A stretch of DNA of 64,000 nt from IMG/VR virus record IMGVR_UViG_3300027621_000003, positions 186,001-250,000 of that record; one strand, written 5' to 3'. A program made the translations under genes and the position numbers. Positions 306-25,500 of this stretch are shown here, piece by piece (the first letter of the stretch is position 1; every line of letters begins with the position of its first letter). The notes below the pieces were generated by a model, which saw only the letters and a list, made by a program, of their open reading frames with translations, had not been told where the DNA came from and did no database searches.

Positions 306-578
306 TTAACAATCTTCTTGGGAATTAATATAATATTGAATGATATAATCTTTTAGGTTTTGTTTTACAAAATCAATAACCTCTTCAGGTTGAATCCTTT
401 TAATACCCTCTAAATCTAAAAAGGTTTCCAATTCATAAATTACCCCAATATAAAAATAAGATTCATTTGAATAATCACAGGGGTACATATTATCCAATAC
501 AACATCCAATACTTTTTTAATATAATAAAACCTTCTTCTTAATGACGTGTTCTGTTCCTCAGTGATAATGATTTTCAT
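306..578 (-). CDS. Hypothetical phage protein, leader type A (MKIIITEEQ)
   Basis: ORF track; TATTTAT at 584-590. Confidence 0.75.
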   Translation of the reverse strand: MKIIITEEQNTSLRRRFYYIKKVLDVVLDNMYPCDYSNESYFYIGVIYELETFLDLEGIKRIQPEEVIDFVKQNLKDYIIQYYINSQEDC

Positions 579-610
579 ATTCCATAAATATACGGGAGGG
601 TAAAATAGGA

Positions 611-671
611 AAATTTTCCCAAAAATTCTATTTCACATATAGGGTATCTTCATAAGAAGGGGGGTCATGTT
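611..671. repeat. ~60-bp intergenic direct repeat, copy 1
   Basis: aaattttcc(c)aaaaattctatttcacatataggg..ta(t/c)cttcataagaaggggggtcatgtt also occurs at 1483-1544. Confidence 0.85.
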
Positions 672-728
672 TATAGGAAATAAAAAACCCCTCTGTTGGG
701 AGGGGTTCCAAGTATTTTTTTAAATGTA

Positions 729-1427
729 TTACCCACAAGGTACTACACTATCTTTAACCGTACTGGCAAACCAGTTAATTTGTAATGTATCATCTTTACG
801 TTGAATTATTTTATCAAAAGGAATTTTTACACAAACGTTATAAAGAAACTTTTGTTGAGGATATTTTTCGGTGCCTGCTTCATAAGAGTCCACATCATAA
901 TACTCTATTGATTCTGCTTTGATAATAATACCATCTTTGTCTTTACGGATAACTTTAGCACCCTCGATGTCTACGAACAACTCTCTTTTATCTCCCATTG
1001 TACTTGAATAAGTATATGACCTACCAATAATCATTTGTCTATTAGTGATAAGACGAATTACCGTACCAGGATTGTACATTGAATTTTGTTTCTGAGACTC
1101 ATCTTCTTGTTGATTAACCAATTTCATTATCAAATTATAATCAATATGATATTCATTCTGTAACCATTGGTCCAAGTTTTGACCATCTTGAACACCAAAT
1201 GCTTTTTTAACCCCTTCCCAATCCTGCTTGTTATTAATTCTGTTTACTATAGTTTGTTGAATGTTTTTTGCGGCGTCGCTTGTAACATTTAACCCCGTCA
1301 TCAATTCTTTGAAATAATCAGCAATTTCTTTGTAGTCTTGTGGGGTAAGTTTTTTGGCTTGTTCACTAATTACTCTTCTAACAATTCTTGTTAAATCTGA
1401 TTCTGTTAATCTTATAATTTTTTTCAT
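729..1427 (-). CDS. Hypothetical phage protein, leader type A (MKKIIRLTESDL)
   Basis: ORF track; TATTTAT at 1445-1451. Confidence 0.8.
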   Translation of the reverse strand: MKKIIRLTESDLTRIVRRVISEQAKKLTPQDYKEIADYFKELMTGLNVTSDAAKNIQQTIVNRINNKQDWEGVKKAFGVQDGQNLDQWLQNEYHIDYNLIMKLVNQQEDESQKQNSMYNPGTVIRLITNRQMIIGRSYTYSSTMGDKRELFVDIEGAKVIRKDKDGIIIKAESIEYYDVDSYEAGTEKYPQQKFLYNVCVKIPFDKIIQRKDDTLQINWFASTVKDSVVPCG

Positions 1428-1482
1428 ATTAATTTTCTTTAGTTATAAATATATTAAAAAGAGAAAAGGAGTATTTTTCCCA

Positions 1483-1544
1483 AAATTTTCCAAAAATTCT
1501 ATTTCACATATAGGGGGTACCTTCATAAGAAGGGGGGTCATGTT
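1483..1544. repeat. ~60-bp intergenic direct repeat, copy 2
   Basis: Near-identical to 611-671. Confidence 0.85.
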
Positions 1545-1669
1545 CCCGAACGGTATTTTTTATAACCATATGTCCCCCACCCATATAATATATTCCCGAA
1601 CGGGAAACAATTCAGGGATGGGCAATAAAAAACCCCTCTTTATGGGAGGGGGTCTTTAAATTAGTTTTA

Positions 1670-2029
1670 TTAATTATCAGGAGTAATCGGCATCGGTAAA
1701 TCAATTCCGATTTTTTTATCAGGAAGTACCTCACCCACCTTACTAAAGAATTTAGATGATGCCTTTTGAAAGTCTTGGTCATATACTTGAGCCAATATCT
1801 TCCCTGTTGTAATGTCAGTTAATTTAACGTAGGTTGCAAATACGTCTTTCCAAACACAAACCATGTATGGGGTTTTAGTCCCCGTCCCACCTGTTCCTGT
1901 ATTACTATTACATAAAGGATTCTCAGATGTTCCTTGTTGTTTTTGAGGTGTAGACTGTTCCACTAAGTATCTACCCTCTAATCTCTTGTTTGCGTCTTCC
2001 ATAGAAGACAATTTTCTATATGTACTCAT
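1670..2029 (-). CDS. Hypothetical phage protein
   Basis: ORF track; co-oriented with neighbours and followed by a terminator. Confidence 0.7.
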   Translation of the reverse strand: MSTYRKLSSMEDANKRLEGRYLVEQSTPQKQQGTSENPLCNSNTGTGGTGTKTPYMVCVWKDVFATYVKLTDITTGKILAQVYDQDFQKASSKFFSKVGEVLPDKKIGIDLPMPITPDN

Positions 2030-2041
2030 ATTTTTTTATTA

Positions 2042-2428
2042 TTACCAAGTTCTACATGCCCAATATCTTGGTTTCCATCTTGGACCAGGAGTATCACAAT
2101 TATGTCTTGCTCTAAAGTTCTTTCTTCTTTCAGGATTATTCTTTTTAATCCTCATTATTTTACCTTTGGCTGATTTTCCACCAAAACCAAAGTTTACCTT
2201 AACAACCTTACCTTTATCGTTCTTAACATATACTTTGGACTTTTTAATGTCACCCTGCATTATCTTACCCAACTGAACTTTTCTTCCCTGATATTCTGCT
2301 TCGGTTAATAAATCACCAATAACAAAATTGGTCTCTTCTACCGAACCATATCCATCTTCATATAAAAATGAATTCTCATTTTCTAATACTAATCTTTTAT
2401 ACTGAGACTCACTAATGATTATTTCCAT
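2042..2428 (-). CDS. Hypothetical protein, leader type A plus a basic RRKNFRARHNCD...RYWACRTW module seen in T4-like phages
   Basis: Start corrected to ATG 2428 (TATTTAT at 2434-2440); motif recognition. Confidence 0.75.
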   Translation of the reverse strand: MEIIISESQYKRLVLENENSFLYEDGYGSVEETNFVIGDLLTEAEYQGRKVQLGKIMQGDIKKSKVYVKNDKGKVVKVNFGFGGKSAKGKIMRIKKNNPERRKNFRARHNCDTPGPRWKPRYWACRTW

Positions 2429-2717
2429 ATTCAATAAATACCTCTTTCCCTAAAAAATTTCCAGAAAATTTCATCGTTAGTATTGTACCCCCAAAACCAC
2501 CTGTCAGAATGTCATATAGGGGGGGATACGGGAGGGGGGACCCCCACCATGGGGGGTGTGCCGTACTACAGGGGGGGAGTATAGTGTGGATAACTTATGT
2601 CCCCCTCCCCATGTGTCATAGTGTCATGTGGATAAGTAATGTCCCCGACTGATAAGGAGGTGGATAACTCCCCCCCTAAAAAAAAGGTGGGGGTTTGGTA
2701 GTGTCAAATAGATTACC

Positions 2718-2725
2718 TATCTTTG
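2718..2725 (+). promoter_or_regulatory. Bacteroidota-type -7 promoter element TATCTTTG
   Basis: Matches TAnnTTTG. TGTCA lies 16 nt upstream, the same spacing as for the copy at 2847-2854. Confidence 0.6.
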
Positions 2726-2858
2726 TATTATGATTCAGTTGTATACTGAACTTGGGCGTGGGGGCTTTCAGTGGTCACGGGAGAGTAGACTCCAACCTGC
2801 CTTATATTTTTTTTATAAGGTATTAGGAAATGTCAAAGGTATGTTGTACCTTTGTATT

Positions 2859-3236
2859 ATGATGAAGTTAATGGAATCCCCCACTCAGATTAAAAGACTT
2901 AATAAGATTATGAAGGATAGGATTATTACCTGTGGTGTTGTATCCTATTACTATGAGAACCTTAAGGGTTACTACTCCCTTCATGCTAACAAGGGGGACA
3001 ATTATACAACCCCCCATTTATACCTTAAGTTTAATATCACTGAGTGTACGGGTAAAAGACAATATGGTGATAAAGGAACATACCCCATCTTTAGGGGTCA
3101 TCGTAGAGTTAGGGGTATTAACTCTTCCATCATATATAACATTACCCAAGACGGTGTTAAACTATTCCTTAAACACTTTGGGGTTAAGTACTATGAACTT
3201 GGTAAGACTATGTTTGTTTGGCCCATTCAGAAATAG
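2859..3236 (+). CDS. Hypothetical protein (basic)
   Basis: Start corrected to ATG 2859, 4 nt after TACCTTTG (2847-2854). Confidence 0.6.
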   Translation: MMKLMESPTQIKRLNKIMKDRIITCGVVSYYYENLKGYYSLHANKGDNYTTPHLYLKFNITECTGKRQYGDKGTYPIFRGHRRVRGINSSIIYNITQDGVKLFLKHFGVKYYELGKTMFVWPIQK

Positions 3237-3582
3237 TCTCATAGGCTATTGATGATAGAGTTGTTCTTGTAATGTTGAAATCCCCCTCGTTAAGATGGAA
3301 GTGTTTGTGAAGTAATTCATGTAATGGTCTTAAGTCACAGTCCACCATCATCCATACATTCTGACTGAGGGGTTTATTTACAAATCCTTTCTTACCCTTC
3401 TCGAACCATACTATTGCCTCAGGTAATACATTCCCCCTATTTGGAACAAACCTAAGTATAATCCCCTTGGAACTTTCATCTACTTGGGGGGTATAATACT
3501 TCTGTACAATTAATCTTATGTTATGGTCCGTAACATTGGATGGTTCCATCTGTCTTTCGTATATCGGTTGGTCTTCACTCAT
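3208..3582 (-). CDS. Hypothetical protein
   Basis: Start corrected to MSEDQ at 3582; TATTTAT at 3590-3596. Confidence 0.6.
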   Translation of the reverse strand: MSEDQPIYERQMEPSNVTDHNIRLIVQKYYTPQVDESSKGIILRFVPNRGNVLPEAIVWFEKGKKGFVNKPLSQNVWMMVDCDLRPLHELLHKHFHLNEGDFNITRTTLSSIAYETISEWAKQT

Positions 3583-4272
3583 ATTGTTCATAAATATATA
3601 CTTATCCACACTTTTGTCCATACCTGACACCCTGTCAGTTCATAAAAAAATATGGGTTTGTGGATAACTTTGGGGGTAAAAATTTGGAATTGTCAAAATG
3701 TCAGTCCCCTCTTTCGCATGGGGATAATGCCTTCACAAGGTTTTAGTTTCCCCCACTTTCTCCCACAGGTGTATATTACCATAGTGTTATTCCCCCTGAC
3801 GCTATTGTAAGGACCAATTTATCCCCTCTGTTGACCCCTACAGAACCACTTTTTTCTATAGTGTTAAACCCCAGAGAATAATAGTTGTTATGGTCTACGA
3901 GGGCGGGAGACCCTTTAGGGTCCTTTAATCCCCCTTCAACGAGGGATGAAGTCCTTTTTTAAGATGACAACTAATGGACAACTTAAGTGGGTAATCTATT
4001 CCTGTCCCCTTAGTTCTATGGATATTATATATGGTGGTAAAAAGTGGGACATTATGTTTTGTATCTCATTCATCAGGTGAAACCTGACATTTACGATACA
4101 ACTAATCAGTCCCCCACTATTATCTATTCTATATGACATTACATATAATTGGTCGTAGACCAATACTTTTATATGTCATTACATATACGAAGATAACATA
4201 TCACCATCTCATTGTATCCATCTCCTTTAGTGGGGGACAAACTATAAGTGGGGGGTTCTTATTGTGGGGGAA

Positions 4273-4725
4273 TTACTTTTCCGTAATGGCCGTTACGGTA
4301 ATCGGTGTTACCATAGGTTCTAAGAAATTACAGAGGTCAGTAAGATATTTCATACACTCAGGGTCTTTCATACTACAATCTATAAGTTCTATCCTCTTAG
4401 GGTCTTCTAAGTACCATAGAGCAAGTTTGATTGACTTAACCTTAGTATCATATACATCACCGAACTCATGGTCATCATTATACCATCCTGTTTGGGTTTT
4501 TTGTTTAGTAAACTCTATAGAGAAGTTTAGGTTTGAACCATCGGTATAATGTTCAGGAACGTAATGAATATATACACCATTATCTTCTAATGTCTTATAT
4601 GTGTTTAATGTTACATCACCTATTAATTCCATAATCTGTCTTGTAAGATGACCTGCAGTTTTATAACCATCTAAATTCCATTGTATAATAAGATGTTCTA
4701 TTGTTGAATGTAATTCTTTATCCAT
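4273..4725 (-). CDS. Hypothetical protein
   Basis: ORF track; first ATG (MDKELH) at 4725. Confidence 0.6.
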   Translation of the reverse strand: MDKELHSTIEHLIIQWNLDGYKTAGHLTRQIMELIGDVTLNTYKTLEDNGVYIHYVPEHYTDGSNLNFSIEFTKQKTQTGWYNDDHEFGDVYDTKVKSIKLALWYLEDPKRIELIDCSMKDPECMKYLTDLCNFLEPMVTPITVTAITEK

Positions 4726-4938
4726 AGTGTTAATAATAATATATTCCCCCTGTTTAATCAAATCATATACGCATTTATCCGTATATATACGAATGAATAT
4801 CCGATTGGTTTATAGTTGTTAGTTTACTATAAACAGAATGAAGTAAAATTATGAATGAATGTGTGGAACGGAGTGAAACACCATGAGTGAGTAAATTTAC
4901 TTTATGATGTATCAAATCTTAATGATGCCGGGAACTGA

Positions 4939-5562
4939 TTATTCCCCCACCCTTTTTTCTTCTTTTTTTGGAACAATTACCGCATATTGTCCATTCCATT
5001 CAGATGCTGGTGGAATGTTTGGATTACCAGGGAATGCGGTTAACAATGAATAAACATTTCCGTTTTTAATACCTTGTAATATTTCATCATCTTCTTTAAC
5101 ATCATCAGGAAGATATTCTGGATTTGATTTTCTTATAATTAATGTTAATGTATCGGTCTTAAAATTATCTGAAGATTTGCTAGTATAAATTAAAGGGACT
5201 TCAATATCATTACCTCGTTCTTTTTTTGTTGTGGTAGTTTCTTTTGCGTCTTCATAATTTATTGCTTCATCATATGGTTTAACCAAATCATAACCAATAT
5301 TAGGAACGTTAACTTCAAACGCTCCACCTTCACCCAATTCATTATTTTCCAATGCCATATTAATAAAATTATTAATATCTTCATCAGTTATTCCTTCTTT
5401 AAAGGTTGAACCTGTTCCAAATTGATTGTGAGTTTTTATATGGTTTTTTGTATAATCGGCAACTAAAACAACATTTCCATCGTTTGATTGAATTTTATCT
5501 GTGGCTTCAATGATTAATCCCATCATTGATTTAATTCTGTCTATGTTTTCTTGCAATTTCAT
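4939..5562 (-). CDS. Leader type C protein with a toxin-RNase-like domain
   Basis: MKLQENIDRIKSMMGL leader; HIKTHN..GSTF ... LLTAFPG pattern; TATTTAT at 5568-5574. Confidence 0.55.
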   Translation of the reverse strand: MKLQENIDRIKSMMGLIIEATDKIQSNDGNVVLVADYTKNHIKTHNQFGTGSTFKEGITDEDINNFINMALENNELGEGGAFEVNVPNIGYDLVKPYDEAINYEDAKETTTTKKERGNDIEVPLIYTSKSSDNFKTDTLTLIIRKSNPEYLPDDVKEDDEILQGIKNGNVYSLLTAFPGNPNIPPASEWNGQYAVIVPKKEEKRVGE

Positions 5563-5624
5563 AATTAATAAATATGACACCCTACCCCTTTTTATTATAT
5601 TTACTTTTACCTATATTTATAGTT

Positions 5625-5930
5625 ATGGAAGCATCCACCGAAATGATTAAAAGAGTATTAGAACACTTGGTTTCACCTAAGTGGAATGGTATTGTGGAAT
5701 ATGAGATTGAACCTTCTACACACGATGATACAGGTGTAGAATACTACATGATAGATGTTATATTTGATATTGCTGGATATTGGGCGAAATATCACGCAGG
5801 TGAATATGATTATTCAGACCAAATGGATGCAGAGATTGAAGCTGATGTTAGAAATGCGGTGAAGTATTTGGGTATTAACACAACATTTGTAACAATATAT
5901 GTTAGGGATGAAGATGGAAATAATAAATAG
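5625..5930 (+). CDS. Hypothetical acidic protein, paralog of 10096-10368
   Basis: Start corrected (TATTTAT at 5614-5620). Shares the LxxLVxPK...(K/R)YL(G/S)I pattern. Confidence 0.7.
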   Translation: MEASTEMIKRVLEHLVSPKWNGIVEYEIEPSTHDDTGVEYYMIDVIFDIAGYWAKYHAGEYDYSDQMDAEIEADVRNAVKYLGINTTFVTIYVRDEDGNNK

Positions 5931-5938
5931 AATTACTA

Positions 5939-6277
5939 TTATGGACAAACATATTGATGCATAAGACGTAATCTTTCACCATATTTGTCTTTAGCATATT
6001 TCTCCATCATCCTATACGCTTTACCCCACTCAGGTGAACTATCATCCACACTTTCAAAGTAATCCCAATATATTGTGTTTAATGTTTTAGAAATTGTTGC
6101 CTCAATAAATTCATCCTCATCAATTTTACATATAGAATATTGGACATTGACTTCATCTGCAGATAGAAAGATTAAATCATCAACATTACTTATTCTTCTT
6201 TGTACGGCAGCCAAAAGATTGGACTCATTTAATCCCATCATCTCTTGTATTCTATTTACCTGTTCCTGTAAGTTCAT
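5939..6277 (-). CDS. Hypothetical protein, leader type C (MNLQEQVNRIQEMMGL)
   Basis: ORF track. Confidence 0.75.
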   Translation of the reverse strand: MNLQEQVNRIQEMMGLNESNLLAAVQRRISNVDDLIFLSADEVNVQYSICKIDEDEFIEATISKTLNTIYWDYFESVDDSSPEWGKAYRMMEKYAKDKYGERLRLMHQYVCP

Positions 6278-6753
6278 TTCTTCTTCTTTACACAGTTAGG
6301 ATATCTTTTACCAAACATTGTCTTCATACCTTTTTGAGTATAACCTGCCCAACATCTTTCAGTTAATTCCCCCTCTTTCATCTCTTGGGTTTTCTTTTTA
6401 GATTGTTCTTTCTTAGACTCAATATATTCAAACGCAGTCTTTAATCTTTTTTTAACTTCAGGGTCTTTTGCTCTTTCTAAGGCAACTCTTAATCTTTGAT
6501 GAATCAGATTAATAATCTGAGATTGTCTGGCATGTGATTTTGACTTGAAACTTTCTTTGTTTAATGTGTCAACAATATCTTGTTTTGTTCTAAACTTTAC
6601 AGATACAGTATCACTTGGATTTTCATCCGTATATAATCTTCTGTCAGAACCTTCAGGTTTTTTACCTGTTCCTGATTTTGGGTCATTTTCACTAATAACA
6701 CGTTTTACTAATGATATTAATTCTGATTCTGTTAATCTAACTATTTTTTTCAT
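6274..6753 (-). CDS. Modular hypothetical protein: leader A + DPKxGTGKKP..RRLYTDENP module + CWxGY..G.K...PNCV module
   Basis: Motifs recognised from T4-like phage proteins. Confidence 0.75.
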   Translation of the reverse strand: MKKIVRLTESELISLVKRVISENDPKSGTGKKPEGSDRRLYTDENPSDTVSVKFRTKQDIVDTLNKESFKSKSHARQSQIINLIHQRLRVALERAKDPEVKKRLKTAFEYIESKKEQSKKKTQEMKEGELTERCWAGYTQKGMKTMFGKRYPNCVKKKK

Positions 6754-6754
6754 A

Positions 6755-7534
6755 TTACTTTCTGTTGTAAGGTCTAAATCTCAATGGATTTGCTTTTATT
6801 GCTGACTTAGGAAATCTTAATCCTACTCCTTGTCGTCTTGCGTTTTTTAATGTTCTTGCGTATTCATCAAGTTCATCATTGTTTTCTTCTGCTTGAATAC
6901 CTTTAGTCTTATCTAAATTATCCTTTGGTATTTGTTTAATAATTGAAAAGTTATATCCCCAATAGTTTCCTTCATCACCAATACTTGATATTCTTAATGG
7001 ACGGCTATTCATTGTATCGGCAAATGTTGTCTCAGGATAATCATTTATTTTATCCAATTTATTTTTTATTTCATCCCAATCAACATCAACATAATCACCA
7101 TACTTTGTTAACATTTCATCAAACGAATCAAAACCATCTGCGAATCCTCTCCATCCACTATTGTAATAAGGTTTGTCATGTTTAACAAAGATATATTTAA
7201 TTCCTAATGGGTTTTTATCTTCATCCACATCCCTTCGTCTCTTCTCAAAGTATTGTCTTAGTTCTTCACCATAGTTGTCGTTTAGATACTCTTTTATTTC
7301 ATCCCAAGCCTTATGATAATCATCACCATACTCCTCAAATTCTCTTGGCATGATATCATACATGGCTTTGTGAATTGTTCTGAGTGTGGCCATATCTAAT
7401 TCTGTTGGTTCCTCTTTCTGAAACGCACCTATTCTATGTTTTTTAATTATACTGTCAATATTGCTGAAATCTATTCTGCGTTTTATTGACGGTGTAAGTT
7501 CTTCTTTTAATATTTTTCTAATTAAATCTTTCAT
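6755..7534 (-). CDS. Hypothetical protein, leader type B (MKDLIRKILKEE)
   Basis: ORF track. Confidence 0.75.
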   Translation of the reverse strand: MKDLIRKILKEELTPSIKRRIDFSNIDSIIKKHRIGAFQKEEPTELDMATLRTIHKAMYDIMPREFEEYGDDYHKAWDEIKEYLNDNYGEELRQYFEKRRRDVDEDKNPLGIKYIFVKHDKPYYNSGWRGFADGFDSFDEMLTKYGDYVDVDWDEIKNKLDKINDYPETTFADTMNSRPLRISSIGDEGNYWGYNFSIIKQIPKDNLDKTKGIQAEENNDELDEYARTLKNARRQGVGLRFPKSAIKANPLRFRPYNRK

Positions 7535-7536
7535 AA

Positions 7537-8070
7537 TTAATAAAAAGTTTTTACACCCATGTATTTTGATAAATCATATTTATCTATTATCTGTTTGAAG
7601 ATTTGTTGTCTATATCTTACACCTAATGTATTTTTTTTAGTAAGGAATGTATAACCAAATCCAGAATCTCCACTTGTTCCCAAAACTTTGTAATATGTTT
7701 GGTCATGAAGTCTTTGTGGTCTCAATCTGGCATTAAAATTAAATTCGTGACCGTTTTTTGAACCAAATATGAATTTCCCCAATTCTTTTTCATCCGAATG
7801 CCAAGATTTACTTTCGTCTATTCCAAGTTCATCAACTAACGCCTTATGTAAATATAAATTCATTCTATCCAAAGACATATAAGCAAGTGGTGTAGTTGTA
7901 TCTTCACTAAACTTAATAATGTCACCGTCATAAAGAATTTTAATTAAATTTTCAACTCCACCCATAACTCTGGCAGCAGTTTCTAATCCTGATTTTTTTA
8001 TCAGGGATTTAATGGCATCTTTTTTAGATTCAGTTTGTTCTCTTAATATTTTTCTAATTAAATCTTTCAT
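7537..8070 (-). CDS. Hypothetical protein, leader type B (MKDLIRKILREQ)
   Basis: Start corrected to 8070. Confidence 0.75.
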   Translation of the reverse strand: MKDLIRKILREQTESKKDAIKSLIKKSGLETAARVMGGVENLIKILYDGDIIKFSEDTTTPLAYMSLDRMNLYLHKALVDELGIDESKSWHSDEKELGKFIFGSKNGHEFNFNARLRPQRLHDQTYYKVLGTSGDSGFGYTFLTKKNTLGVRYRQQIFKQIIDKYDLSKYMGVKTFY

Positions 8071-8071
8071 A

Positions 8072-8437
8072 TTAGCAAAGGTGGTCATCTTTAATGTCCT
8101 GTATTAAATTACCGCCAGTAAATTTATCGGAATACTTATCGTTAAAATATTTAATTATTGCCTTATTAATTTCTTTTTTAGACACACCAAAAGACCTTCC
8201 ATATTGTGTTAATCTTTTCCAATTATCACAATCTGTTGAAACCCAAAGATTCCCAAATATATTCTTATGAAAAGATAAAAATTTACTATCAGGTTGGTAA
8301 AATCTGACATAACCATTACCATCATTTATAACAACAAAGTCTTTTAATACTCTATCAAAGAAATGACTTAAGACATTATAGTAATTGTCCTCGGTCATTA
8401 AATTGGAAAGTTGACTCTCCGTGATAATAATTTTCAT
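8072..8437 (-). CDS. Hypothetical protein, leader type A (MKIIITESQL)
   Basis: TATTTAT at 8442-8448. Confidence 0.75.
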   Translation of the reverse strand: MKIIITESQLSNLMTEDNYYNVLSHFFDRVLKDFVVINDGNGYVRFYQPDSKFLSFHKNIFGNLWVSTDCDNWKRLTQYGRSFGVSKKEINKAIIKYFNDKYSDKFTGGNLIQDIKDDHLC

Positions 8438-8802: not shown

Positions 8803-9348
8803 TTATTTTGCTTGTTCAATGTTATAACTCTCAAGCATTTTGGCATATTCATCGGTATCTCTCCTCCTTATACTTTCTCTCTTTGCTAATTCTTGAATTT
8901 TTATAAGTCCATCTATGATTTGTTCTGGACGTGGAGGACAACCCGGTACATACACATCAACGGGAATTATGTTATCAATACCTTGAAGAACGCTATATGT
9001 ATCAAATATTCCACCAGAACAAGCACAAGCACCAACCGACAATACCCATTTAGGTTCAGCCATTTGGTCATATACCTGTTTGAGCACAGGACCCATCTTT
9101 TTTGATATAGTACCCATGACCATCAATAAATCTGTTTGTCGTGGAGTAAAAGACAAACGTTCAGAGCCAAATCTAGCCAAATCATAATTGGCTCCCATTG
9201 TCGCCATAAACTCAATTCCGCAACAGGATGTGGCAAAAGGCAAAGGCCAAAGAGAATTTGCTCGAGCCAATCCAATAACTTTATCAAATGAAGTGGCAAA
9301 GAAACCTTGTCCTTCTACTCCTTCGGGTGAATCAACGATTTTTACCAT
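8803..9348 (-). CDS. nuoB: NADH-quinone oxidoreductase subunit B
   Basis: [29 protein letters not shown] and [14 protein letters not shown] signature motifs. Confidence 0.95.
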
Positions 9349-12722: not shown

Positions 12723-13270
12723 AAGCCTAACTCTGTCTCAATATCAGCCAACTTTGGAAGGACTCTGTCTTTGTCTGACATTATTAATTGGCTAACATCT
12801 ACACCCCAATCTATATTAATTTCAGGGTCATTATATATAATACCACCGTCTGCTGATGTCATATATAACTCATCACATTTATAATGGAATACAGCAACAT
12901 CTGAAAGTGTAACAAACCCATGAGCAAATCCTTTTGGAACCAACATCATTTTCATATTGTCTTCAGATAATTTAACACCAAACCATTGTTTGTAGGTGTC
13001 TGATGATTTTCTAAGGTCAACCACAACATCATATACTTCACCTACAATACATCTAACAAGTTTTGCTTGTGGTGCTATCTTTTGAAAGTGAAGTCCTCTT
13101 AAAACTCCTTTAACACTAATTGATTGGTTATCTTGTACAAAGTTTGTATAGATACCTTGTTCCCTGAAAAAACGTTGGTTATAAGTTTCAAAAAAATACC
13201 CTCTGTTATCTTCGTGAACTGTAGGACTAATAACATACAAATCTTTAATTGGTGTTTGTTCTATTTTCAT
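12719..13270 (-). CDS. rfbC: dTDP-4-dehydrorhamnose 3,5-epimerase
   Basis: DNRGYFFE, FVQDNQSIS, GVLRGLHFQ and PKGFAHGF motifs. Confidence 0.95.
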   Translation of the reverse strand: MKIEQTPIKDLYVISPTVHEDNRGYFFETYNQRFFREQGIYTNFVQDNQSISVKGVLRGLHFQKIAPQAKLVRCIVGEVYDVVVDLRKSSDTYKQWFGVKLSEDNMKMMLVPKGFAHGFVTLSDVAVFHYKCDELYMTSADGGIIYNDPEINIDWGVDVSQLIMSDKDRVLPKLADIETELGF

Positions 13271-15669
13271 ATTTTACTTAGTGTTTTTAATGTTTTTAAC
13301 AAAGAATCTGGTGTAACAGAAATACTATCAATACCTTCACTAACTAAAAATTCTGCAAAATCAGGAAAATCAGATGGTCCTTGTCCACAAATTCCTACCT
13401 TAGTGTTAGTTTTTTTTCCAACCTTAATAAGGTGTGATATTGCTCGTTTTACCGCAAGATTTCTCTCATCGTAAATTGAGGATACAAGTGCTGAATCTCG
13501 GTCCAATCCTAAAATCAATTGTGTTAAATCATTGGAACCAATTGAGAATCCATCAATATGTTCTGAAAATTCTTCAGCCATAAAAATATTTGATGGTAAT
13601 TCTGCCATCAAATAAACCTCAAGACCTTTTTCACCTCTTTTTAATCCATAAGATTCCATGACTTTATAAACTTTTAATAACTCGTCTATTGTTCTACAAA
13701 AAGGAATCATAACTACAACATTACTAAATCCCATTTTTTCTCTAACTCTTTTGATTGCTTTAATTTCCATACCAAAAGCATCTTTATATTTTTCAGAATA
13801 ATATCTTGAGGCACCCCTCCAACCAATCATTGGATTTTCTTCATCTGGTTCAAAATAAATCCCACCCAATAAATTTTTATATTCATTAGATTTAAAATCG
13901 GAAAGTCTAACAATAACTTTATTGGGATAAAATGCCGCAGCAATTCTTGCAATACCATAACTTAATTTTTTTACAAAGAATGTTTCTTCATCTTCATAAC
14001 CTTTGGTTATTGTATTTATTTGCTCACTTAATTTTTTATCACCAATCTGTTTGTGTTGTAATAATGCCATTGGGTGAACTTTAATGTAATTATTAATTAT
14101 AAATTCTTCTCGTGCTAAACCAACTCCGGCATTTGGTAAACTTGAAAATTTAAATGCTATTTCAGGAGATGCAACATTTAACATTATGGGTGTTGATATT
14201 TTTGGTAATTCTTCCAAATTCGTTTCAATTTTTTCATAATCAATAAAACCATCATAAACAAATCCAACATCTCCTTCTCCACAAGAGACCGTAACTTTTT
14301 GGTGATTTTTTAATATGTCGGTTGCGTTCATTGTTCCAACAATTGCTGGTAATCCCATTTCTCGTGCAACAATTGCTGCGTGACAGGTTCTACCACCTTT
14401 ATTTGTAATGATTGCGGATGCTTTTTTCATTATGGGTTCCCAATCAGGGTCAGTCATATCGGTAACTAAAACACTACCTTCAACAAAGTCAGAGACATCA
14501 AACGTACCGTCACGACCATCTAATGAATACATTATTGTAACTTCTCCATTTGCAATTTTATCTCCGACTGCTCCACCTTTAACAATTGGCGTTAAATTTT
14601 CGGTATTGATTTTATATTCAACAAGTGTATCAGTTTTTTTTCTTGAATGTATTGTTTCGGGTCTGGCTTGAACAATATATAATTCATTGGTTAAACCATC
14701 AATTGCCCATTCCACATCCATAGGACACCAATATCCTTTTAAATCGGAATAATATTTTTCAATTGATGTAACCCATTTTGAGATTTCTAATACTTGATTA
14801 TCATTGATACAAAAATTGTTTTTATGTTCCTCATCAATATTAATAATTTTGGTTAATTTACCTTGACCCTCACCATAAACCATTTTTTTATCTTTGTTAC
14901 CCAATTTTTTTTCAATAATACAAGAAAATCCTTCTTCCAATAATGGTTTGAATACAATAAATTCGTCAGGAGATACTGAACCTTGAACAACCATCTCACC
15001 CAACCCATAACTTCCATTTATAATTACAACATCTTTGAATCCACTTTCAGTATCTAATGAAAATGCAACACCAGAAGATGATAAATCAGAACGAACCATT
15101 TTTTGAACACAAACAGACAATCCAACATCAAAATGGTCATATCCAAAAGATGTTCTATAAGATATTGCTCTATCGGTAAACAGGGAAGCAAAACAATTTC
15201 TTACAGATTCTAAAATGGATTCTGTACCTCTAACGTTTAAAAAAGTTTCTTGTTGACCAGCAAAACTGGCATCAGGTAAATCTTCGGCGGTTGCAGATGA
15301 CCTTACAGCAACGTCAGTCATTGTTTGACCATATGTTTCCGATAACTCAAGATACTTTAATTGTATTTCATTTTTTAGTTTTTCAGGAAAAACTCCATTT
15401 CTGATTAATTCCCTAATTGCAAGACCAGTCTTACGAAGTGCGATTATGTCATTTGGGTTTAAATCTAAGATTAGTTTTCTGATAGATTTATCTAATTTAT
15501 TATGATTAATAAAATCATAATATCCTTTTACGGTTATAGCAAAACCATTTGGAACTTTAATTTTTAAAGTATTAAGATGTTGCAACATTTCACCCAAAGA
15601 TGCATTTTTTCCACCGACTACATGAATGTCTTTTAAAGACACATTGTTTAAATCAAGAATATATTTCAT
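13267..15669 (-). CDS. ppsA: Phosphoenolpyruvate synthase (pyruvate, water dikinase)
   Basis: VGGKNASLGEM, VAVRSSATAEDLPDASFAGQQ, GGRTCHAAIVARE and DGFSIGSNDLTQ motifs. Confidence 0.97.
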   Translation of the reverse strand: MKYILDLNNVSLKDIHVVGGKNASLGEMLQHLNTLKIKVPNGFAITVKGYYDFINHNKLDKSIRKLILDLNPNDIIALRKTGLAIRELIRNGVFPEKLKNEIQLKYLELSETYGQTMTDVAVRSSATAEDLPDASFAGQQETFLNVRGTESILESVRNCFASLFTDRAISYRTSFGYDHFDVGLSVCVQKMVRSDLSSSGVAFSLDTESGFKDVVIINGSYGLGEMVVQGSVSPDEFIVFKPLLEEGFSCIIEKKLGNKDKKMVYGEGQGKLTKIINIDEEHKNNFCINDNQVLEISKWVTSIEKYYSDLKGYWCPMDVEWAIDGLTNELYIVQARPETIHSRKKTDTLVEYKINTENLTPIVKGGAVGDKIANGEVTIMYSLDGRDGTFDVSDFVEGSVLVTDMTDPDWEPIMKKASAIITNKGGRTCHAAIVAREMGLPAIVGTMNATDILKNHQKVTVSCGEGDVGFVYDGFIDYEKIETNLEELPKISTPIMLNVASPEIAFKFSSLPNAGVGLAREEFIINNYIKVHPMALLQHKQIGDKKLSEQINTITKGYEDEETFFVKKLSYGIARIAAAFYPNKVIVRLSDFKSNEYKNLLGGIYFEPDEENPMIGWRGASRYYSEKYKDAFGMEIKAIKRVREKMGFSNVVVMIPFCRTIDELLKVYKVMESYGLKRGEKGLEVYLMAELPSNIFMAEEFSEHIDGFSIGSNDLTQLILGLDRDSALVSSIYDERNLAVKRAISHLIKVGKKTNTKVGICGQGPSDFPDFAEFLVSEGIDSISVTPDSLLKTLKTLSKI

Positions 15670-18612: not shown

Positions 18613-20502
18613 TTATCTTATTAATGTAAAAGTTCCGTTGTATTGAGTGGATTTATTTTCTTTTGATATTATTTCTATTTTGTAGGTGTATACACTACTT
18701 GGTGACATTTTACCTAAGTAGGTACCGTCCCATCCTGTATTAATATCAACAGTTTCATACAACTTCTCTCCCCACCTGTTGTAAATTTCCATTCTAAAAG
18801 AATAACAATTTGAAATAAAGGGTTGAAAAGTGTTGTTGATAGCCGGGCCTTCTGGATTTGGGGTAAAAACATCGGGTATATACACCTGTAAATCACAAAG
18901 GGAATCTAAAATAGTAAATTTTCTAATAACTGAATCGCATCCGTTTATATTTTGAATAGTATCTTTAAACACCCCTGATATTTTAAATGTTAAATTTTCA
19001 TAAGAAAATTCCTCATCATCACATTTGCTAAATGTTTTATTAATATACTGTACTGTGGATTTGTAAAAATGAATAAATACATAAATGTTTGAGTCACATC
19101 CAGAGGTAGTTTGATTCCACTTGGTGAATTGTGTGTCATTACTGTACTTTTGTCCATCAAAAATAATCGGGTCATTACATGAATATAATTTAACTGTATC
19201 AAAATATGATAATCTATAGAGAGTGTCTATAAAGTAATTTACACACAAATTCTCTGTTTCTGTTTTATAAACAAAAGATTTTTTAGATGGGGGTTCGATG
19301 CTAATGCATTTAACATGTGGATTTAAATAGTAATTCACAGTATCTTTTGTTACTATTGTTAGATACAAAGGGTTTAAGGTGTTATCTAACTTATATGTAC
19401 CATCTTGACTATAGTATTTTTCATTTACATTTATAGAATCCCCTTTACATAAGGTCCTTATCTTAAAAGATATATCTTGAGTTTCTATACAGGTATTGTT
19501 ATTCAAATCAACCCAAAAATCGATGCCTGGATCTGGGTAGAAGTATTTTTGTTGAAATTTTTTATCTGAGGTTATGTAGTAATCGTGAACCTCCCCCGCC
19601 ATAATGTCGATAACATTCGAGTCGATAAACGTAAGATAACTTACAGCCCATGAATTTGGGTCTCTATAACAATATCCATTTTCACATAAATACAAAAAAT
19701 GTAAGCCGTCACATTGTCCTGAAATAGCAACTGCTGGGAAAGGTAAGTTAATCTTTCTCAGGACACGAATTGAATCAACTGAATAATTAAAAGTAAAAAC
19801 ATTTCCATCCTTATCTAGGGCTGATACAAATGCAGTTGTTGCTTTGATATCTACAATAGATTTTAATGCTAATCTGGATATTTTTGGATTTTTAATGAAT
19901 TCACCCCACCCTCCTACATTTATAAAATCAATGTACCCATTAGAATTTAAAGCAAAAAACTTCCCACCCGCTCCCATAGCAACACGTTTTACGTTATTAA
20001 CCCCGGTGATTTGTACAACCTCTTTTATGTAACTTGTGGAATTTGTCGGAGATGTCACCCATAGACTACCATCTTTTTTCACAAAAGCCACCCCGTTTAT
20101 TGCGGCATCACAAAATGATACATTACTTATCACTCCGATAGGGTATTGAATTTCACCCCACACATATCCACTGTCATTTGTTTTAATTATTCCCATAAAG
20201 TATCCACCAGAATGGTATTTTACTTCTGAAAGGTTATATGTCCATGTAGGTGATGTAATCACCGAACGCCAACCCCTTTTTATTAAACCTGTCATACTGT
20301 ATCCCCACCCGTAAAGTTTTCTTTCGGATCCACATATCATAAATCCACCGTAGGAGTACGAACTTAAATTTGTTGGTTTATACCACAAACGCCCTCCGAA
20401 ACCATCACCAACAATACTATTTTGAGACCAACAAACATTTGTAAAAAATATTAAAATATAAGGTATGATATATTTTGTCATAATTTGTTTATTGTTGCTC
20501 AT
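18613..20502 (-). CDS. T9SS type B CTD (gliding-motility-associated C-terminal/CHU_C) surface protein with an RCC1-like N-terminal region
   Basis: Signal peptide; C-terminal YIPDVFTPN...IYNRWGE...WDGTY...VYTY...GTFTLIR; GCDS repeats. Confidence 0.85.
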   Translation of the reverse strand: MSNNKQIMTKYIIPYILIFFTNVCWSQNSIVGDGFGGRLWYKPTNLSSYSYGGFMICGSERKLYGWGYSMTGLIKRGWRSVITSPTWTYNLSEVKYHSGGYFMGIIKTNDSGYVWGEIQYPIGVISNVSFCDAAINGVAFVKKDGSLWVTSPTNSTSYIKEVVQITGVNNVKRVAMGAGGKFFALNSNGYIDFINVGGWGEFIKNPKISRLALKSIVDIKATTAFVSALDKDGNVFTFNYSVDSIRVLRKINLPFPAVAISGQCDGLHFLYLCENGYCYRDPNSWAVSYLTFIDSNVIDIMAGEVHDYYITSDKKFQQKYFYPDPGIDFWVDLNNNTCIETQDISFKIRTLCKGDSINVNEKYYSQDGTYKLDNTLNPLYLTIVTKDTVNYYLNPHVKCISIEPPSKKSFVYKTETENLCVNYFIDTLYRLSYFDTVKLYSCNDPIIFDGQKYSNDTQFTKWNQTTSGCDSNIYVFIHFYKSTVQYINKTFSKCDDEEFSYENLTFKISGVFKDTIQNINGCDSVIRKFTILDSLCDLQVYIPDVFTPNPEGPAINNTFQPFISNCYSFRMEIYNRWGEKLYETVDINTGWDGTYLGKMSPSSVYTYKIEIISKENKSTQYNGTFTLIR

Positions 20503-22572: not shown

Positions 22573-25500
22573 TTACCTTAGTAATGTAAAAGTTCCGTTG
22601 TATTGAAATACTTTATCTTCAAGTGACGTTACTATCATTTTATATACATATACACCATCTGGTGCAGGTTGTCCTTTATAATTACCATCCCATCCTTTTG
22701 TAAGGTCGGTTGTTTCATACATTTTTTCACCCCAACGATTAAAGATTAACATTTCATATGTTTTGTTATTAATAACATACGGTCTGAATGTATTGTTTTC
22801 ATTTGGTCCAGCACCATCAGGTGTAAATGCGTCAGGTACAAAGATAATGATATCAGGACCAATAACAACCTTTTTCATTGAAGAATCTTTACATCCTTTA
22901 TCTGTGGTAACAATTAACTTAATCCAATATGTCCCTGTATCCTTTCCAAATACAATGTTTGAGTTCTTAAGTGTATCACTACCAATCTTATATGATTTAC
23001 CCCAAGTCCAATTGTGTTTCATGTTGGTGACAAATGGATTCTGACTAACACTTGATGTGTTAATAGTTTTGAACTTAGGTAATGCCACCGTTGTTTTGTA
23101 CAATGGGTCGGTATTAAACACAACACTTGGTTTTGGATAAACATTAACGGTTTGTGTTATTGTTCTATTACATTGTTTTTTACCTTCTACGTTTGTAATT
23201 GATAAAGTTATTTGGTATTGTCCTTGTGTTGAGAACAAGTAAGGAACTGAACTGTTATTAGTGGAGATACTATTAGTATTTACATACCAATTATATGTTA
23301 ACAAAGAAGGGTTAATTCCTTTTCTTTCGGTGGGTGTAAAAGTGGTATTCAGTGGTTCACATCCATTTTGATATGTAAACATTGGGTCGGGATATTGGTG
23401 AATATAAACTCTTACGGTATCAAAAGGGTTTGGACATACATTTTTTGCAACACTCCAATCAACTCTAACATCAACATAACCTAACGCAGTATCAGTAATT
23501 GTTGGGACATACTTTTTATTCATGGTTGGTCCAAATGTTGCCATTGGTGTCCAATTAAATGTTCCACCATTTAAGTATTGGGTATCAATTTTTAATGTAA
23601 CTGTGTCAAACTCACATACTTCAATTGGTTTAACAAATTTAACTTTTGGTATATTAACAATTGTGATTTTAGCGTATTCAGTATCTTGACAGTTATATGG
23701 TGTAAGACCAATCATCATCCATTTGTATGGACCTGGTACATAACCTGTTAGAGTTGTTGTTCCGTTGAAGAATCTACCATCAGGATAACTCACAATGGTT
23801 CCACCTTTATTACTTACAGCTAATGTTAACACATCCAAAGGAATTGCGGATGCACATATTGTAGTATCTCTAACTCTCAAGTCCGATGTATCATGAACTA
23901 TGATATTAAAACTATCTATTTTTACACAACCAAATTGTGAACTTACATATTTTATGTTATACACACCAGGTCCTGTAGATGTTTTGAATAATCCTGTAGA
24001 AATGTTTGTAGTTACTTTTGGATGACTCCTATCACCATTTACATCTTGAACGTAAATTGTTCCTCCTGTTGGTTTAACACCATTAACGGTTATGTAGTCA
24101 AACATATTAACATTAATACCTGAGTTCACACAATAATCAGGAATTGTTTTAATAATAACTGTTGGTTCTGCAATTATATTTACGTCAACAGTATCGGTAC
24201 TTTGACATCCTGTAACTAAATCTCTAACAATAAGTTTGAATGTGTATTTTCCTTGATATTCATCTTGAAACGATAAACCAAAGTTAAATTTGATGTTTGG
24301 TGTTACACCACCTGAAATGTCATACAATAATTTTGATGTATCAATTCCTGATGGAGCTCTTACCACATCCCATCTCATATAAACACCTGATTTGGTTGCT
24401 GGTTTAGTTCTTAACACGTCCATCATCATTGACCCAATATCCTGACAAATAGTTTTTGGAACTAATGTAATCATTGGTGTACCATAAATTGTTTGTGTTG
24501 TTGAATCCATGTTGGAACAACTATTTGTGTCTGTGAACTTCACATACATTTTGGTGGTATAATTGTTTCCACCTTGTAATTTACTATTGTCAAGTAAAGT
24601 TGTGTTGAACAAAAATCTTCCATTATAAGGAATATATCCGTAAGTTATATTACCTGATTTTTTTAACTTATCTCCATTCCAAACATCATACGTTCCAAGA
24701 TTATGAGGTTTAACTAAGAATAGTTCCGACCATATACTACCATAAGAATAACATTGAGGTTTTAGTGGTTTTGGACTCCAACTAATTTTTGGTAATGGTT
24801 TAACCCTCACAAACATTGTATCCATATCTTCACAAGAACGTCCATTTTGAGTTAGAACAGTCTTTAATGTAAACATATAGGTTAATTTTGTTATATCAGA
24901 TTTTAGCTTATAGGTTGATAAATTACCCAATCCGCCCCAAGTATATGTAGGACTTAATAGTGGTGGTCTATGACTGGCAGTCAAGGTGAATGTGTCTTTA
25001 TCGCATATTGCTTGGTTTAGTCCTGCATTTGTTATTACAGTATCGTTTACAAAAACTGTTGCGGTATCATATTTTACACACTTCCACTTTGTTTCCATTA
25101 CCTGTACCCAATAGATGCCTTTTAAATTGGTTTTAAATATTCGTGTTGTATCACCAGTGCTCCACATATATTTAACCGTGTCTGAATTTTGAGCATCAAA
25201 TGTAGCAATTTCATAAGTACATATTTGTTGGTCAATTCCAATTCCCACCACTGGTAATGGTTTCTTATAAATTGTAGTTGTATCATAGAAAATACATCCA
25301 TCCCCATCAGTAATTTTTAGACGAACTGTAGAGTCACGATTAATATTAGGAATACTTAAAGTTTGAAAAGTATCTCCTAAAATATGCTCTTCAGATTTCC
25401 AAGCCGCTTTAGACCCTGTATCTTTCACTACTCTGGTCCAATAGTATTTGAATGGTGAATTACCAAACAATATGTTAGCATTTAACTTCATTGTAGTACC

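What the first reader, a model, noticed from the sequence alone, without database searches (positions are those of the whole stretch)
2450..4270. Cluster of perfect DnaA boxes with iteron-like repeats in a phage genome
Seen: four perfect TTATCCACA/TGTGGATAA boxes (2585, 2627, 3602, 3659) and one near-match (2659), in two clusters flanking a convergent gene pair. TGTCA-N3-TGTCA occurs at ~2502, ~2614 and ~3691, and the inverted TGACA-CCC-TGTCA at ~3625. About ten GTGGG(G)/(C)CCCAC copies and long G/C runs stand out in an otherwise AT-rich genome. Known: TTATCCACA is the canonical DnaA box. Inference: a host-DnaA-dependent origin (plasmid-like or pseudolysogenic maintenance), or a datA-like sink that titrates DnaA to stall host replication.
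Basis: partly seen in the sequence, partly recalled or inferred. Interest (0 to 1): 0.7.

Follow-up and report, generated by a model that had tools for sequence, protein, structure and literature searches.

The report
Conserved DnaA-box cluster in jumbo phage
A 295-kb uncultured lake phage of Bacteroidota carries two conserved non-coding blocks studded with perfect host DnaA-binding motifs around a small gene cassette; the motifs are real and under selection, but the region looks more like a DnaA-wired promoter/operator module than a classical replication origin.

Summary
Four of the genome's six perfect TTATCCACA boxes lie within 1,074 bp (Monte Carlo p = 2.5e-6). All three TGTCA-N3-TGTCA repeats of the 294,914-bp genome are here, as are 9 of 26 GTGGGGG copies.

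The boxes sit in two non-coding blocks, IGR-A (2429-2858) and IGR-B (3583-4272). These flank a convergent pair, orf125 (+) and orf124 (-). The same layout recurs in at least 8 diverged jumbo-phage lineages; in a 317-kb relative, 4 of 8 boxes again cluster in the cassette. A 10-lineage alignment keeps a fixed order of weak box, TGACA repeat, strong box, palindrome and inverted box.

Classical origin features fail:
- no GC-skew inflection;
- no AT-rich unwinding element (the region is among the least AT-rich 1.2% of the genome);
- no DnaA-trio;
- no phage DnaA or ParA;
- the phage's DnaB and PolB lie 130-165 kb away.

In relatives the box sits exactly 5 bp upstream of a Bacteroidota-type -33 TTTG in 11 of 49 sites (0.4 expected).

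My best reading (0.4) is host-DnaA operator sites on host-RNAP promoters of a variable early cassette. A non-canonical origin (0.2), a DnaA sink (0.1), a phage-protein site (0.12) and a T5 iss-like element (0.08) remain open.

The parts
2429..2858 (.). IGR-A: divergent non-coding block between gene 2042-2428 (-) and orf125 (+); 54% AT against 68% for the genome
   Evidence: 81% identical to relative L009 against 73.5-76% for the cassette ORFs; same motif order in 7 lineages
2502..2514 (+). TGTCA-GAA-TGTCA direct repeat; present as its reverse complement in L035 and L047
2519..2578 (+). G-run block (G7-ATAC-G3-A-G6, C5, G6, G7); the core G6-ATAC-G6-A-G6/7 is kept in all lineages
2585..2593 (-). 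DnaA box A1, perfect (TTATCCACA on the - strand)
   Evidence: conserved in L009; opposite orientation in L035 and L047
2614..2626 (+). TGTCA-TAG-TGTCA direct repeat abutting box A2
2627..2635 (-). DnaA box A2, perfect
2659..2667 (-). DnaA box A3, one mismatch (TTATCCACC), followed by C7 and A8
   Evidence: not conserved in L009
2694..2725 (+). Promoter P1, Bacteroidota type: TTTG (2694-2697), 20-nt spacer, TATCTTTG (2718-2725)
   Evidence: identical in L009; the consensus itself is recalled from my own knowledge
2730..2822 (+). Non-coding leader or small-RNA candidate downstream of P1, ending in a CCTTATA-T8-TATAAGG hairpin
   Evidence: Frame broken by two 1-nt indels in L009; substitutions not codon-biased, [3,6,5]; fold z = -1.76 only
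2823..2854 (+). Promoter P2, a 72% copy of P1: TTAG in place of the -33 element, TACCTTTG (2847-2854) as -7, ATG at 2859
2859..3236 (+). orf125, the lineage-specific cargo gene; other lineages carry other genes here, for example a 130-aa HExxH protein in L035
   Evidence: differences flat across codon positions, [32,29,39]
3208..3582 (-). orf124, the conserved small protein of the cassette; 71 representative clusters at 50% identity; alpha/beta fold with no known relative
   Evidence: third-position bias [23,18,47]
3583..3770 (.). Conserved core of IGR-B (90% identical to L009). Read toward orf124 it holds weak box, TGACA repeat, strong box, palindrome, inverted box
3602..3610 (+). DnaA box B1, perfect, 19 nt upstream of the orf124 ATG
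   Evidence: kept in 5 of 10 lineages
3625..3637 (.). Palindrome TGACA-CCC-TGTCA
3659..3667 (-). DnaA box B2, perfect, fused to CTTTGGGGG. It is the best-conserved box: AAAG plus TTATC[C/A]ACA in 9 of 10 lineages (TTACCCACA in L048)
3691..3703 (+). TGTCA-AAA-TGTCA direct repeat, near-invariant in 10 lineages
3719..3727 (-). DnaA box B3, weak (TTATCCCCA), kept in 9 of 10 lineages
3747..3769 (-). GTGGGGGAAA-type G-run repeats (CCCCCAC on +), conserved
3771..4272 (.). Less conserved right part of IGR-B (69.5% identity over 3771-4200, many indels). It holds 21-nt repeats at 4127-4147 and 4167-4187, and three GTGGGGG copies at 4230, 4248 and 4264

Best explanation
The two non-coding blocks are a promoter/operator module. 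It belongs to a small, variable, host-RNA-polymerase-driven cassette in a family of freshwater Bacteroidota jumbo phages.

Proposed mechanism: host DnaA binds the canonical and near-canonical boxes. A second, unidentified factor binds the 8-bp-period TGACA repeats. Together they set the activity of the divergent host-type promoters (P1, P2, the orf124 promoter and the promoter of the leftward flanking gene). Cassette expression is thereby coupled to the host's DnaA and replication state.

Shown:
- the motifs, their clustering, and their conservation in order across lineages;
- absence of a phage DnaA;
- a Bacteroidota host;
- Bacteroidota-type promoters;
- a fixed 5-bp box-to-(-33) spacing in relatives.

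Inferred: that DnaA is the ligand, that binding regulates transcription, and the direction of the effect.
For: 1. The boxes lie in intergenic DNA directly upstream of gene starts and of promoters matching the Bacteroidota consensus TTTG-N19-21-TAnnTTTG. P1 is at 2694-2725 and a duplicated P2 is at 2823-2854.
2. In 9 non-redundant relatives, box-like sites number 49 against 4 for the reversed control motif. In 11 of the 49, TTTG follows at exactly +5 (0.4 expected). Several of these are followed by a full promoter.
3. The conserved core is about 190 bp immediately upstream of orf124. It is 90% identical to L009 against 74-76% for the ORFs. Motif order is fixed in 10 lineages.
4. Short motifs are inverted in place between lineages: TGTCAgaaTGTCA against TGACAttcTGACA, and GGGGAC against GTCCCC. 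This fits protein-binding sites on DNA rather than RNA structure or coding sequence.
5. The host is Bacteroidota: three phage proteins carry T9SS sorting domains. A candidate chromosomal oriC of a lake Saprospira-like MAG uses the same perfect 9-mer.
6. Neither this phage nor its relatives encode DnaA or a DnaA_C domain.
7. Metatranscriptome contigs cover the cassette ORFs (2790-3567). The right part of IGR-B is almost silent, so that DNA is unlikely to be an abundant RNA gene.
Against: - In the window's own lineage no box has the +5 spacing. A3 lies 26 nt from P1's -33 element, and B1 lies only 19 nt from the orf124 ATG.
- Only P1 meets the strict promoter pattern. The consensus is just about 3-fold over shuffles genome-wide.
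- Transcription starts are not mapped.
- Non-coding blocks of 430 and 690 bp with conserved G-runs are larger and more elaborate than an ordinary operator. The G-runs are unexplained.
- DnaA binding is untested.
- orf124 has no recognisable DNA-binding fold, so the TGACA-binding factor is unknown.
Confidence: 0.4

Rival explanations
1. Non-canonical phage replication origin. Host DnaA bound at the two box clusters, perhaps helped by transcription from P1/P2 through G-rich DNA (R-loop or G-quadruplex priming), opens the DNA for the phage's own DnaB/PolB replisome.
For: - Conserved clustered boxes in two groups about 1 kb apart, as in bipartite origins.
- Several repeated motifs in long conserved non-coding DNA.
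- The phage has a replisome but no recognised initiator.
- The unitig 2444-3958 has 1.3-1.9x the k-mer depth of its flanks in 4 metagenomes.
- The conserved G6-ATAC-G6-A-G6/7 block lies upstream of P1 and resembles R-loop-forming G-runs (resemblance recalled from memory, not tested).
Against: - No GC-skew inflection.
- No AT-rich unwinding element: maximum AT40 is 0.80, in the lowest 1.2% of genome segments.
- No DnaA-trio.
- The site is 130-165 kb from DnaB and PolB.
- The depth change is step-like rather than graded, and could reflect GC bias or sharing between strains.
Confidence: 0.2
2. DnaA sink, working like datA. As the phage genome multiplies, its 4-6 high-affinity boxes per copy soak up host DnaA and stall host initiation.
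For: - Four perfect and two near-perfect boxes in about 1.1 kb, comparable in number and span to E. coli datA (comparison from my own knowledge).
- Box sequence is conserved while the flanks diverge.
- No phage DnaA.
Against: - A sink needs only boxes. The fixed order with TGACA repeats, the palindrome, the G-runs and the +5 spacing to -33 elements is not explained by titration.
- The genome as a whole is not enriched in boxes: 6 observed, 5-6 expected.
- Some lineages keep only 2 perfect boxes.
Confidence: 0.1
3. The 9-mers are sites for an unidentified phage-encoded DNA-binding protein and only resemble DnaA boxes.
For: - The composite of TGTCA repeat plus box is absent from 401 sampled Bacteroidota genomes, so the syntax is phage-specific.
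- Variants such as TTATCCCCA and TTATCAACA occur at conserved positions.
Against: - The 9-mer matches the DnaA consensus exactly in many lineages, and also in unrelated phages that carry tandem arrays of it without any DnaA_C gene.
- No DnaA_C-like or other DNA-binding domain was found in the cassette proteins.
Confidence: 0.12
4. T5 iss-like element. DnaA boxes in a large untranslated region tether or pause the incoming or replicating genome at membrane-bound DnaA, possibly at or near a physical genome end.
For: - T5-like phages carry 8 DnaA or DnaA-like boxes, including TTATCCCCA, in an untranslated repeat-rich region unconnected with replication (Davison, bioRxiv 10.1101/866236).
- Three partial contigs of relatives end inside the cassette.
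- Most orf124 homologues lie on contigs under 2 kb.
- Depth is elevated 1.3-1.9x.
Against: - The boxes are not in 3-bp-spaced pairs inside long inverted repeats.
- Contig breaks are explained by conserved blocks shared among co-occurring lineages with different cargo (the joint 2820->3658) and by a multi-copy segment at 2036-2303.
- No terminal repeat or read pile-up could be examined.
- The T5 model itself is only a hypothesis.
Confidence: 0.08

Closest known systems
DnaA-regulated promoters (E. coli dnaA, nrdAB, mioC; phage lambda pR, whose activity depends on host DnaA)
   Same: Canonical DnaA boxes lie within tens of bp of promoter elements. The host initiator would serve as a transcription factor. 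In the lambda case a phage exploits it (cited in PMC8477408; the rest is my own knowledge).
   Different: There are several boxes in two blocks, combined with TGACA repeats and G/C-runs. The promoters are of Bacteroidota -33/-7 type. The cargo cassette is variable. Nothing has been tested experimentally.
Injection-stop (iss) region of T5-like phages
   Same: A large untranslated, repeat-rich phage region with about 8 consensus and variant DnaA boxes (including TTATCCCCA), conserved across a phage family and judged unrelated to replication.
   Different: No sequence similarity. The boxes are not in 3-bp-spaced pairs within inverted repeats. No terminal-repeat location is shown. The host phylum differs.
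Bacterial oriC and DnaA-box-bearing plasmid or prophage origins (e.g. P1 oriR)
   Same: Clustered DnaA boxes in two groups, short repeated motifs, adjacent transcription.
   Different: No unwinding element, no DnaA-trio, no skew switch, no Rep or ParA. The DNA is richer in GC than its surroundings rather than AT-rich.
E. coli datA
   Same: About 5 boxes in about 1 kb of DNA that is not an origin.
   Different: datA is chromosomal and IHF-dependent. The element here is phage-borne, embedded in promoters, and has extra conserved motifs.
Tandem DnaA-box arrays in unrelated 36-40-kb phage contigs (L012, L015, L019, L028, L036 and others)
   Same: Perfect TGTGGATAAC boxes followed by a G-run, in phages without a DnaA_C gene.
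   Different: Those arrays have up to 9 boxes at an 11-bp period, lie just upstream of terminase genes, and share no other sequence with the window.

Membership tests
DnaA-dependent replication origin (oriC type) | Cluster of DnaA boxes | tested here: met
   4 perfect and 2 one-mismatch boxes in 1.15 kb; p = 2.5e-6
DnaA-dependent replication origin (oriC type) | Adjacent AT-rich DNA unwinding element | tested here: not met
   Maximum AT in 40-bp windows is 0.80; only 1.2% of random genome segments are as low. A candidate host oriC reaches 0.975
DnaA-dependent replication origin (oriC type) | DnaA-trio: more than 3 repeats of 3'-[G/A]A[T/A]-5' after a GC cluster (definition from PMC7561715) | tested here: not met
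   No run of 4 or more triplets on either strand in 2400-4300. B2 has a GC cluster followed by only TAA AAA
DnaA-dependent replication origin (oriC type) | Strand-compositional (GC-skew) switch at the site | tested here: not met
   Cumulative skew falls monotonically through 180-200 kb. The skew follows gene orientation, so this test is weak
DnaA-dependent replication origin (oriC type) | DnaA binding, DnaA-dependent unwinding, autonomous replication | not testable with these tools
   Needs EMSA or footprinting, a P1-nuclease assay, and a replication assay in a Bacteroidota host
Iteron plasmid or plasmid-prophage origin (P1 oriR type) | Adjacent Rep initiator gene and 17-22-bp iterons | tested here: not met
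   The cassette proteins match no Pfam or PHROG function and no known fold. The repeats are 5-mers with an 8-bp period, two per site
Iteron plasmid or plasmid-prophage origin (P1 oriR type) | Partition system (ParA-type ATPase) | tested here: not met
   No PF13614 match in the genome. One family only, so not exhaustive
datA-like DnaA titration locus | Several high-affinity boxes in about 1 kb outside an origin | tested here: met
datA-like DnaA titration locus | Lowers free or ATP-bound DnaA in vivo (IHF-dependent in E. coli) | not testable with these tools
   Needs in vivo assays
T5-like iss region | DnaA boxes in a large untranslated, repeat-rich region conserved across the phage family | tested here: met
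   comparator
T5-like iss region | Boxes in pairs 3 bp apart inside long inverted repeats with a 52-bp spacer, located in the terminal repeat | tested here: not met
   Box spacings are 42, 32, 57 and 60 bp. Only short imperfect inverted repeats are present. Terminal location could not be tested
DnaA-regulated promoter | Box within or next to core promoter elements of a host-type promoter | tested here: inconclusive
   In relatives, 11 of 49 boxes lie exactly 5 bp upstream of a -33 TTTG. In the window, boxes lie 26-110 bp upstream of P1, and B2 overlaps a TAACTTTG. Transcription starts are not mapped
DnaA-regulated promoter | Promoter activity responds to DnaA | not testable with these tools
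   Needs reporter assays

The most novel reading that the evidence does not exclude
Uncultured phages of Bacteroidota, and possibly of other lake bacteria, commonly exploit host DnaA through dedicated non-coding modules without encoding DnaA themselves.

In this jumbo-phage family the module would be a new kind of bifunctional element. Box clusters, TGACA operators and G-run blocks would read the host's replication state and control a swappable early cassette. The one conserved product of that cassette, the orf124 family, might in turn act on host replication initiation, closing a feedback loop. The same element could also serve as an R-loop-primed origin.
Probability: 0.2. Interest if true: 0.75.

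Novelty: new variant of a known kind. Interest (0 to 1): 0.55.

Why it matters
DnaA boxes in phage genomes have been discussed for only a few model phages (lambda, P1, T5). Here a canonical host-initiator motif is under clear purifying selection. It sits in a fixed syntax in a widespread, abundant and uncultured family of freshwater jumbo phages, and it occurs as tandem arrays in unrelated phages that also lack DnaA. If DnaA really binds, this would be a handle on how large phages of Bacteroidota sense or manipulate host replication. It would also give a defined cis element and a small conserved protein family to test. The practical limit is that there is no cultured host or isolate.

Tried and rejected
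RNA and coding readings of the non-coding DNA:
- Rfam, at gathering threshold and at E <= 5, finds no RNA family in 2300-4500. There are no tRNAs.
- The sigma-70 and terminator scan is no better than shuffles.
- RNA-structure readings of the G/C-runs were rejected. The 11-nt G7/C7 complement (2570-2580 with 2667-2677) and the CCCC/GGGG hairpin near 3706-3722 are not kept in relatives.
- ORF 3652-3810 and the N-terminal extension 2730-2858 were rejected as coding, on codon-position pattern and frame-breaking indels.

Cassette proteins:
- Pfam and PHROGs give no function for them.
- The orf124 model (pLDDT 87) has no significant Foldseek match. Its best VIA Z of 5.1 (AcrF10) is at noise level. 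The Atlas returns only its own viral cluster.

Searches for relatives:
- No isolate phage holds the region or orf124.
- The composite-pattern scan of 185,579 species genomes gave 40 hits, about the chance number, with no relatives among them.
- The composite is absent from 401 Bacteroidota genomes, so it is not a copy of host oriC syntax.

Read data:
- Only assembled contigs were available, so a coverage gradient and molecule ends could not be examined.
Full report
**Context.** The window is bases 186,001-250,000 of a 294,914-bp IMG/VR virus record, 98% complete by CheckV and 32% GC. Three large ORFs carry type IX secretion sorting domains (CHU_C, Por_Secre_tail). That secretion system is confined to Bacteroidota (established knowledge), so the host is a Bacteroidota bacterium. 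Runs that hold the region are freshwater and lake metagenomes. The phage encodes its own DnaB-type helicase (24.4 kb), a family-B polymerase (57 kb) and TerL (114 kb). It encodes no DnaA, no DnaA_C domain and no ParA-type ATPase.

**Observation.**
There is one more near-box at 3719 (TTATCCCCA).
- The genome has six perfect boxes, which is what Markov models predict (5-6). Four of them lie within 1,074 bp (Monte Carlo p = 2.5e-6).
- TGTCA-N3-TGTCA occurs three times in the genome, all here.
- 9 of 26 GTGGGGG copies, and 30 of 113 runs of 5 or more G or C, lie in or next to the region.

**Anatomy.** From left to right:
- Gene 2042-2428 (-).
- IGR-A (2429-2858), which holds a TGTCA repeat, a G-run block, boxes A1-A3 and two tandem promoters of Bacteroidota type. 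P1 is a strict match. P2 is a diverged copy of it.
- A roughly 95-nt non-coding leader between P1 and P2.
- orf125 (+), which converges on and overlaps orf124 (-).
- IGR-B (3583-4272), whose first 190 bp hold B1, a TGACA/TGTCA palindrome, B2, a TGTCA repeat, B3 and G-run repeats.
- Gene 4273-4761 (-).

Substitutions in orf124 are biased to third codon positions, so it is a real gene. orf125 shows no such bias.

**Relatives.**
- An identical copy lies on a second contig (L007).
- A 74-kb contig (L009/L038) is 73.5-76% identical in the two ORFs but 90% identical in the IGR-B core, and it carries five perfect boxes.
- A profile of orf124 homologues retrieves further jumbo-phage contigs of 111-321 kb: L035, L039, L040, L041, L047 and L048. 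Protein identity there is only 23-45%. All of them have perfect boxes on both sides of the orf124 homologue.
- In the complete 317-kb genome G006, 4 of 8 boxes lie in the 1.58-kb cassette.
- Still more distant members on short contigs (L049-L053) keep the syntax, sometimes with TTATCAACA in place of the strong box.
- A 10-lineage alignment shows near-invariant blocks: GGGATTATCCCCA, CCTGACATTnTGACAA, AAAG plus TTATC[C/A]ACA, and a TGACA/TGTCA palindrome.
- IGR-A keeps G6-ATAC-G6-A-G6/7 and its boxes in all lineages.
- Short motifs are sometimes inverted in place between lineages. This argues for protein sites on double-stranded DNA rather than for RNA.
- The cargo between the blocks differs: orf125 here, elsewhere an HExxH protein plus an extra gene. 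All four DNA runs contain low-depth contigs that join 2820 to 3658. The conserved blocks therefore frame a swappable cassette.

**Origin test.** Beyond the box cluster itself, the defining features fail:
- Cumulative GC skew shows no extremum.
- The region is the opposite of AT-rich. IGR-A is 54% AT and IGR-B 61%, against 68% for the genome. No 40-bp window exceeds 80% AT, which is true of only 1.2% of random segments.
- By contrast, a candidate chromosomal oriC of a lake Saprospira-like MAG (L094) has four perfect boxes in a 1.25-kb intergenic region of mean AT 77.5%.
- No DnaA-trio is present.
- No Rep or ParA was found, and the replication genes are far away.
- The composite of TGTCA repeat plus box is absent from 401 Bacteroidota genomes, so the element does not copy host oriC syntax.

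**Promoter link.** In nine non-redundant relatives, box-like sites (TG[TG]GGA[TA]AA) number 49 against 4 for the reversed control motif. In 11 of the 49 a TTTG follows at exactly +5, where 0.4 is expected. Several of these continue into a full TTTG-N19-21-TAnnTTTG promoter. This fixed phasing to the -33 element is what an activator or repressor site looks like. It is the strongest single pointer to function. The window's own lineage lacks the +5 arrangement: its boxes lie 26-110 bp upstream of P1, and B2 overlaps a TAACTTTG. The inference is therefore by homology.

**Transcript and depth data.**
- Metatranscriptome contigs cover the coding parts, including 2790-3567. They leave 3568-4260 almost empty, which argues against an abundant RNA gene in IGR-B.
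- In four DNA metagenomes the contig 2444-3958 has 1.3-1.9x the k-mer depth of its flanks, with step-like edges. This could be GC bias, sharing of the segment among co-occurring strains, or extra copies. It is unexplained and cannot be resolved from contigs.

**Wider pattern.**
- The 18-mer made of box B2 plus its G-run occurs in 23 unrelated viral contigs of 40-52% GC. Those contigs carry tandem arrays of up to nine boxes at an 11-bp period. In several 36-40-kb genomes the arrays lie just upstream of the terminase genes. The five tested have no DnaA_C gene.
- HTVC010P-type pelagiphages, by contrast, do encode a DnaA_C-domain protein (PMC8477408).
- T5-like phages hold eight DnaA-type boxes in their untranslated injection-stop region (10.1101/866236).
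- Literature searches found no description of DnaA boxes in jumbo phages or in phages of Bacteroidota.

**Verdict.** This is a real, conserved, host-DnaA-type cis element of unproven function. My best reading is an operator/promoter module (0.4). A non-canonical origin (0.2), a sink (0.1), a phage-protein site (0.12) and a T5-like tether (0.08) remain open.

Noticed in passing
window 37424-37844 (-): Full-length GOLLD RNA (RF02032, 309.6 bits, E 1e-87) in this lake jumbo phage.
   Followed up: no
window 18613-20502, 22573-27132, 30318-32069 (all -): Three large phage proteins end in type IX secretion sorting domains (CHU_C, Por_Secre_tail). One also has a PKD domain. This places the host in Bacteroidota.
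   Followed up: partly
window 13267-15669 (-) and 8803-9348 (-): Auxiliary metabolic genes: a PEP synthase / pyruvate phosphate dikinase-like protein (PPDK_N 8e-117) and a NuoB-like 20-kDa complex I subunit (Oxidored_q6 5.5e-29).
   Followed up: partly
window 306-8437 and relatives (L035, L039-L047): Many small neighbouring ORFs share an N-terminal motif of the type MKKIIRLTESDLxRIVxRVIxE or MKIIITESQ. Its function is unknown.
   Followed up: no
window 2036-2303: The C-terminal part of ORF 2042-2428 (phrog_7595) has k-mer depth 400-1500 with many variants in four metagenomes, against about 40-100 for its neighbours. It is a segment shared by many co-occurring phages, and contigs break there.
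   Followed up: partly
window 2444-3958: k-mer depth is 1.3-1.9x that of the flanks, with step-like edges, in four DNA metagenomes. GC bias, strain sharing and extra copies cannot be told apart from contigs.
   Followed up: partly
window 2820 -> 3658: All four DNA runs hold low-depth contigs joining these two points (837 bp skipped or replaced). A second joint, 2813->3678, occurs in one run. This indicates variants or relatives with other cargo between the conserved blocks.
   Followed up: partly
L011-L036 (unrelated IMG/VR contigs): Tandem arrays of up to 9 perfect DnaA boxes at an 11-bp period, ending in TGTGGATAACTTTGGGGG followed in many of them by a further G-run. In L012, L015, L019, L028 and L036 they lie just upstream of small and large terminase genes. 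The five records tested have no DnaA_C gene.
   Followed up: partly
L081 3369-3680 (contig binned as Chitinophagaceae): Phage-like contig with four perfect boxes, two of them directly followed by three TGTCA repeats, about 600 bp upstream of a large terminase gene.
   Followed up: partly
L094 2023-3270 (Saprospira-like MAG, Lake Mendota): A 1.25-kb AT-rich intergenic region with four perfect and several variant DnaA boxes: a likely chromosomal oriC. It was used here as the host-type comparator.
   Followed up: partly
IGR-A and IGR-B across lineages (window 2502-2514 and about 3704-3710; L035, L047): Short motifs are inverted in place between lineages while their flanks keep orientation: TGTCAgaaTGTCA against TGACAttcTGACA, GGGGAC against GTCCCC, and box A1 flipped.
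   Followed up: partly
G000 bases 1-700 and the last 400: The virus contig begins and ends inside tandem coding repeats (collagen-like and Ser/Gly-rich). The assembly break is therefore repeat-driven and not a mapped genome end.
   Followed up: no
window 2730-2822 (+): Conserved roughly 95-nt non-coding stretch between P1 and P2, containing GGGCGTGGGGGC and two hairpins. It may be a small RNA or a leader. The fold z-score is only -1.76, and covariation was not tested.
   Followed up: partly
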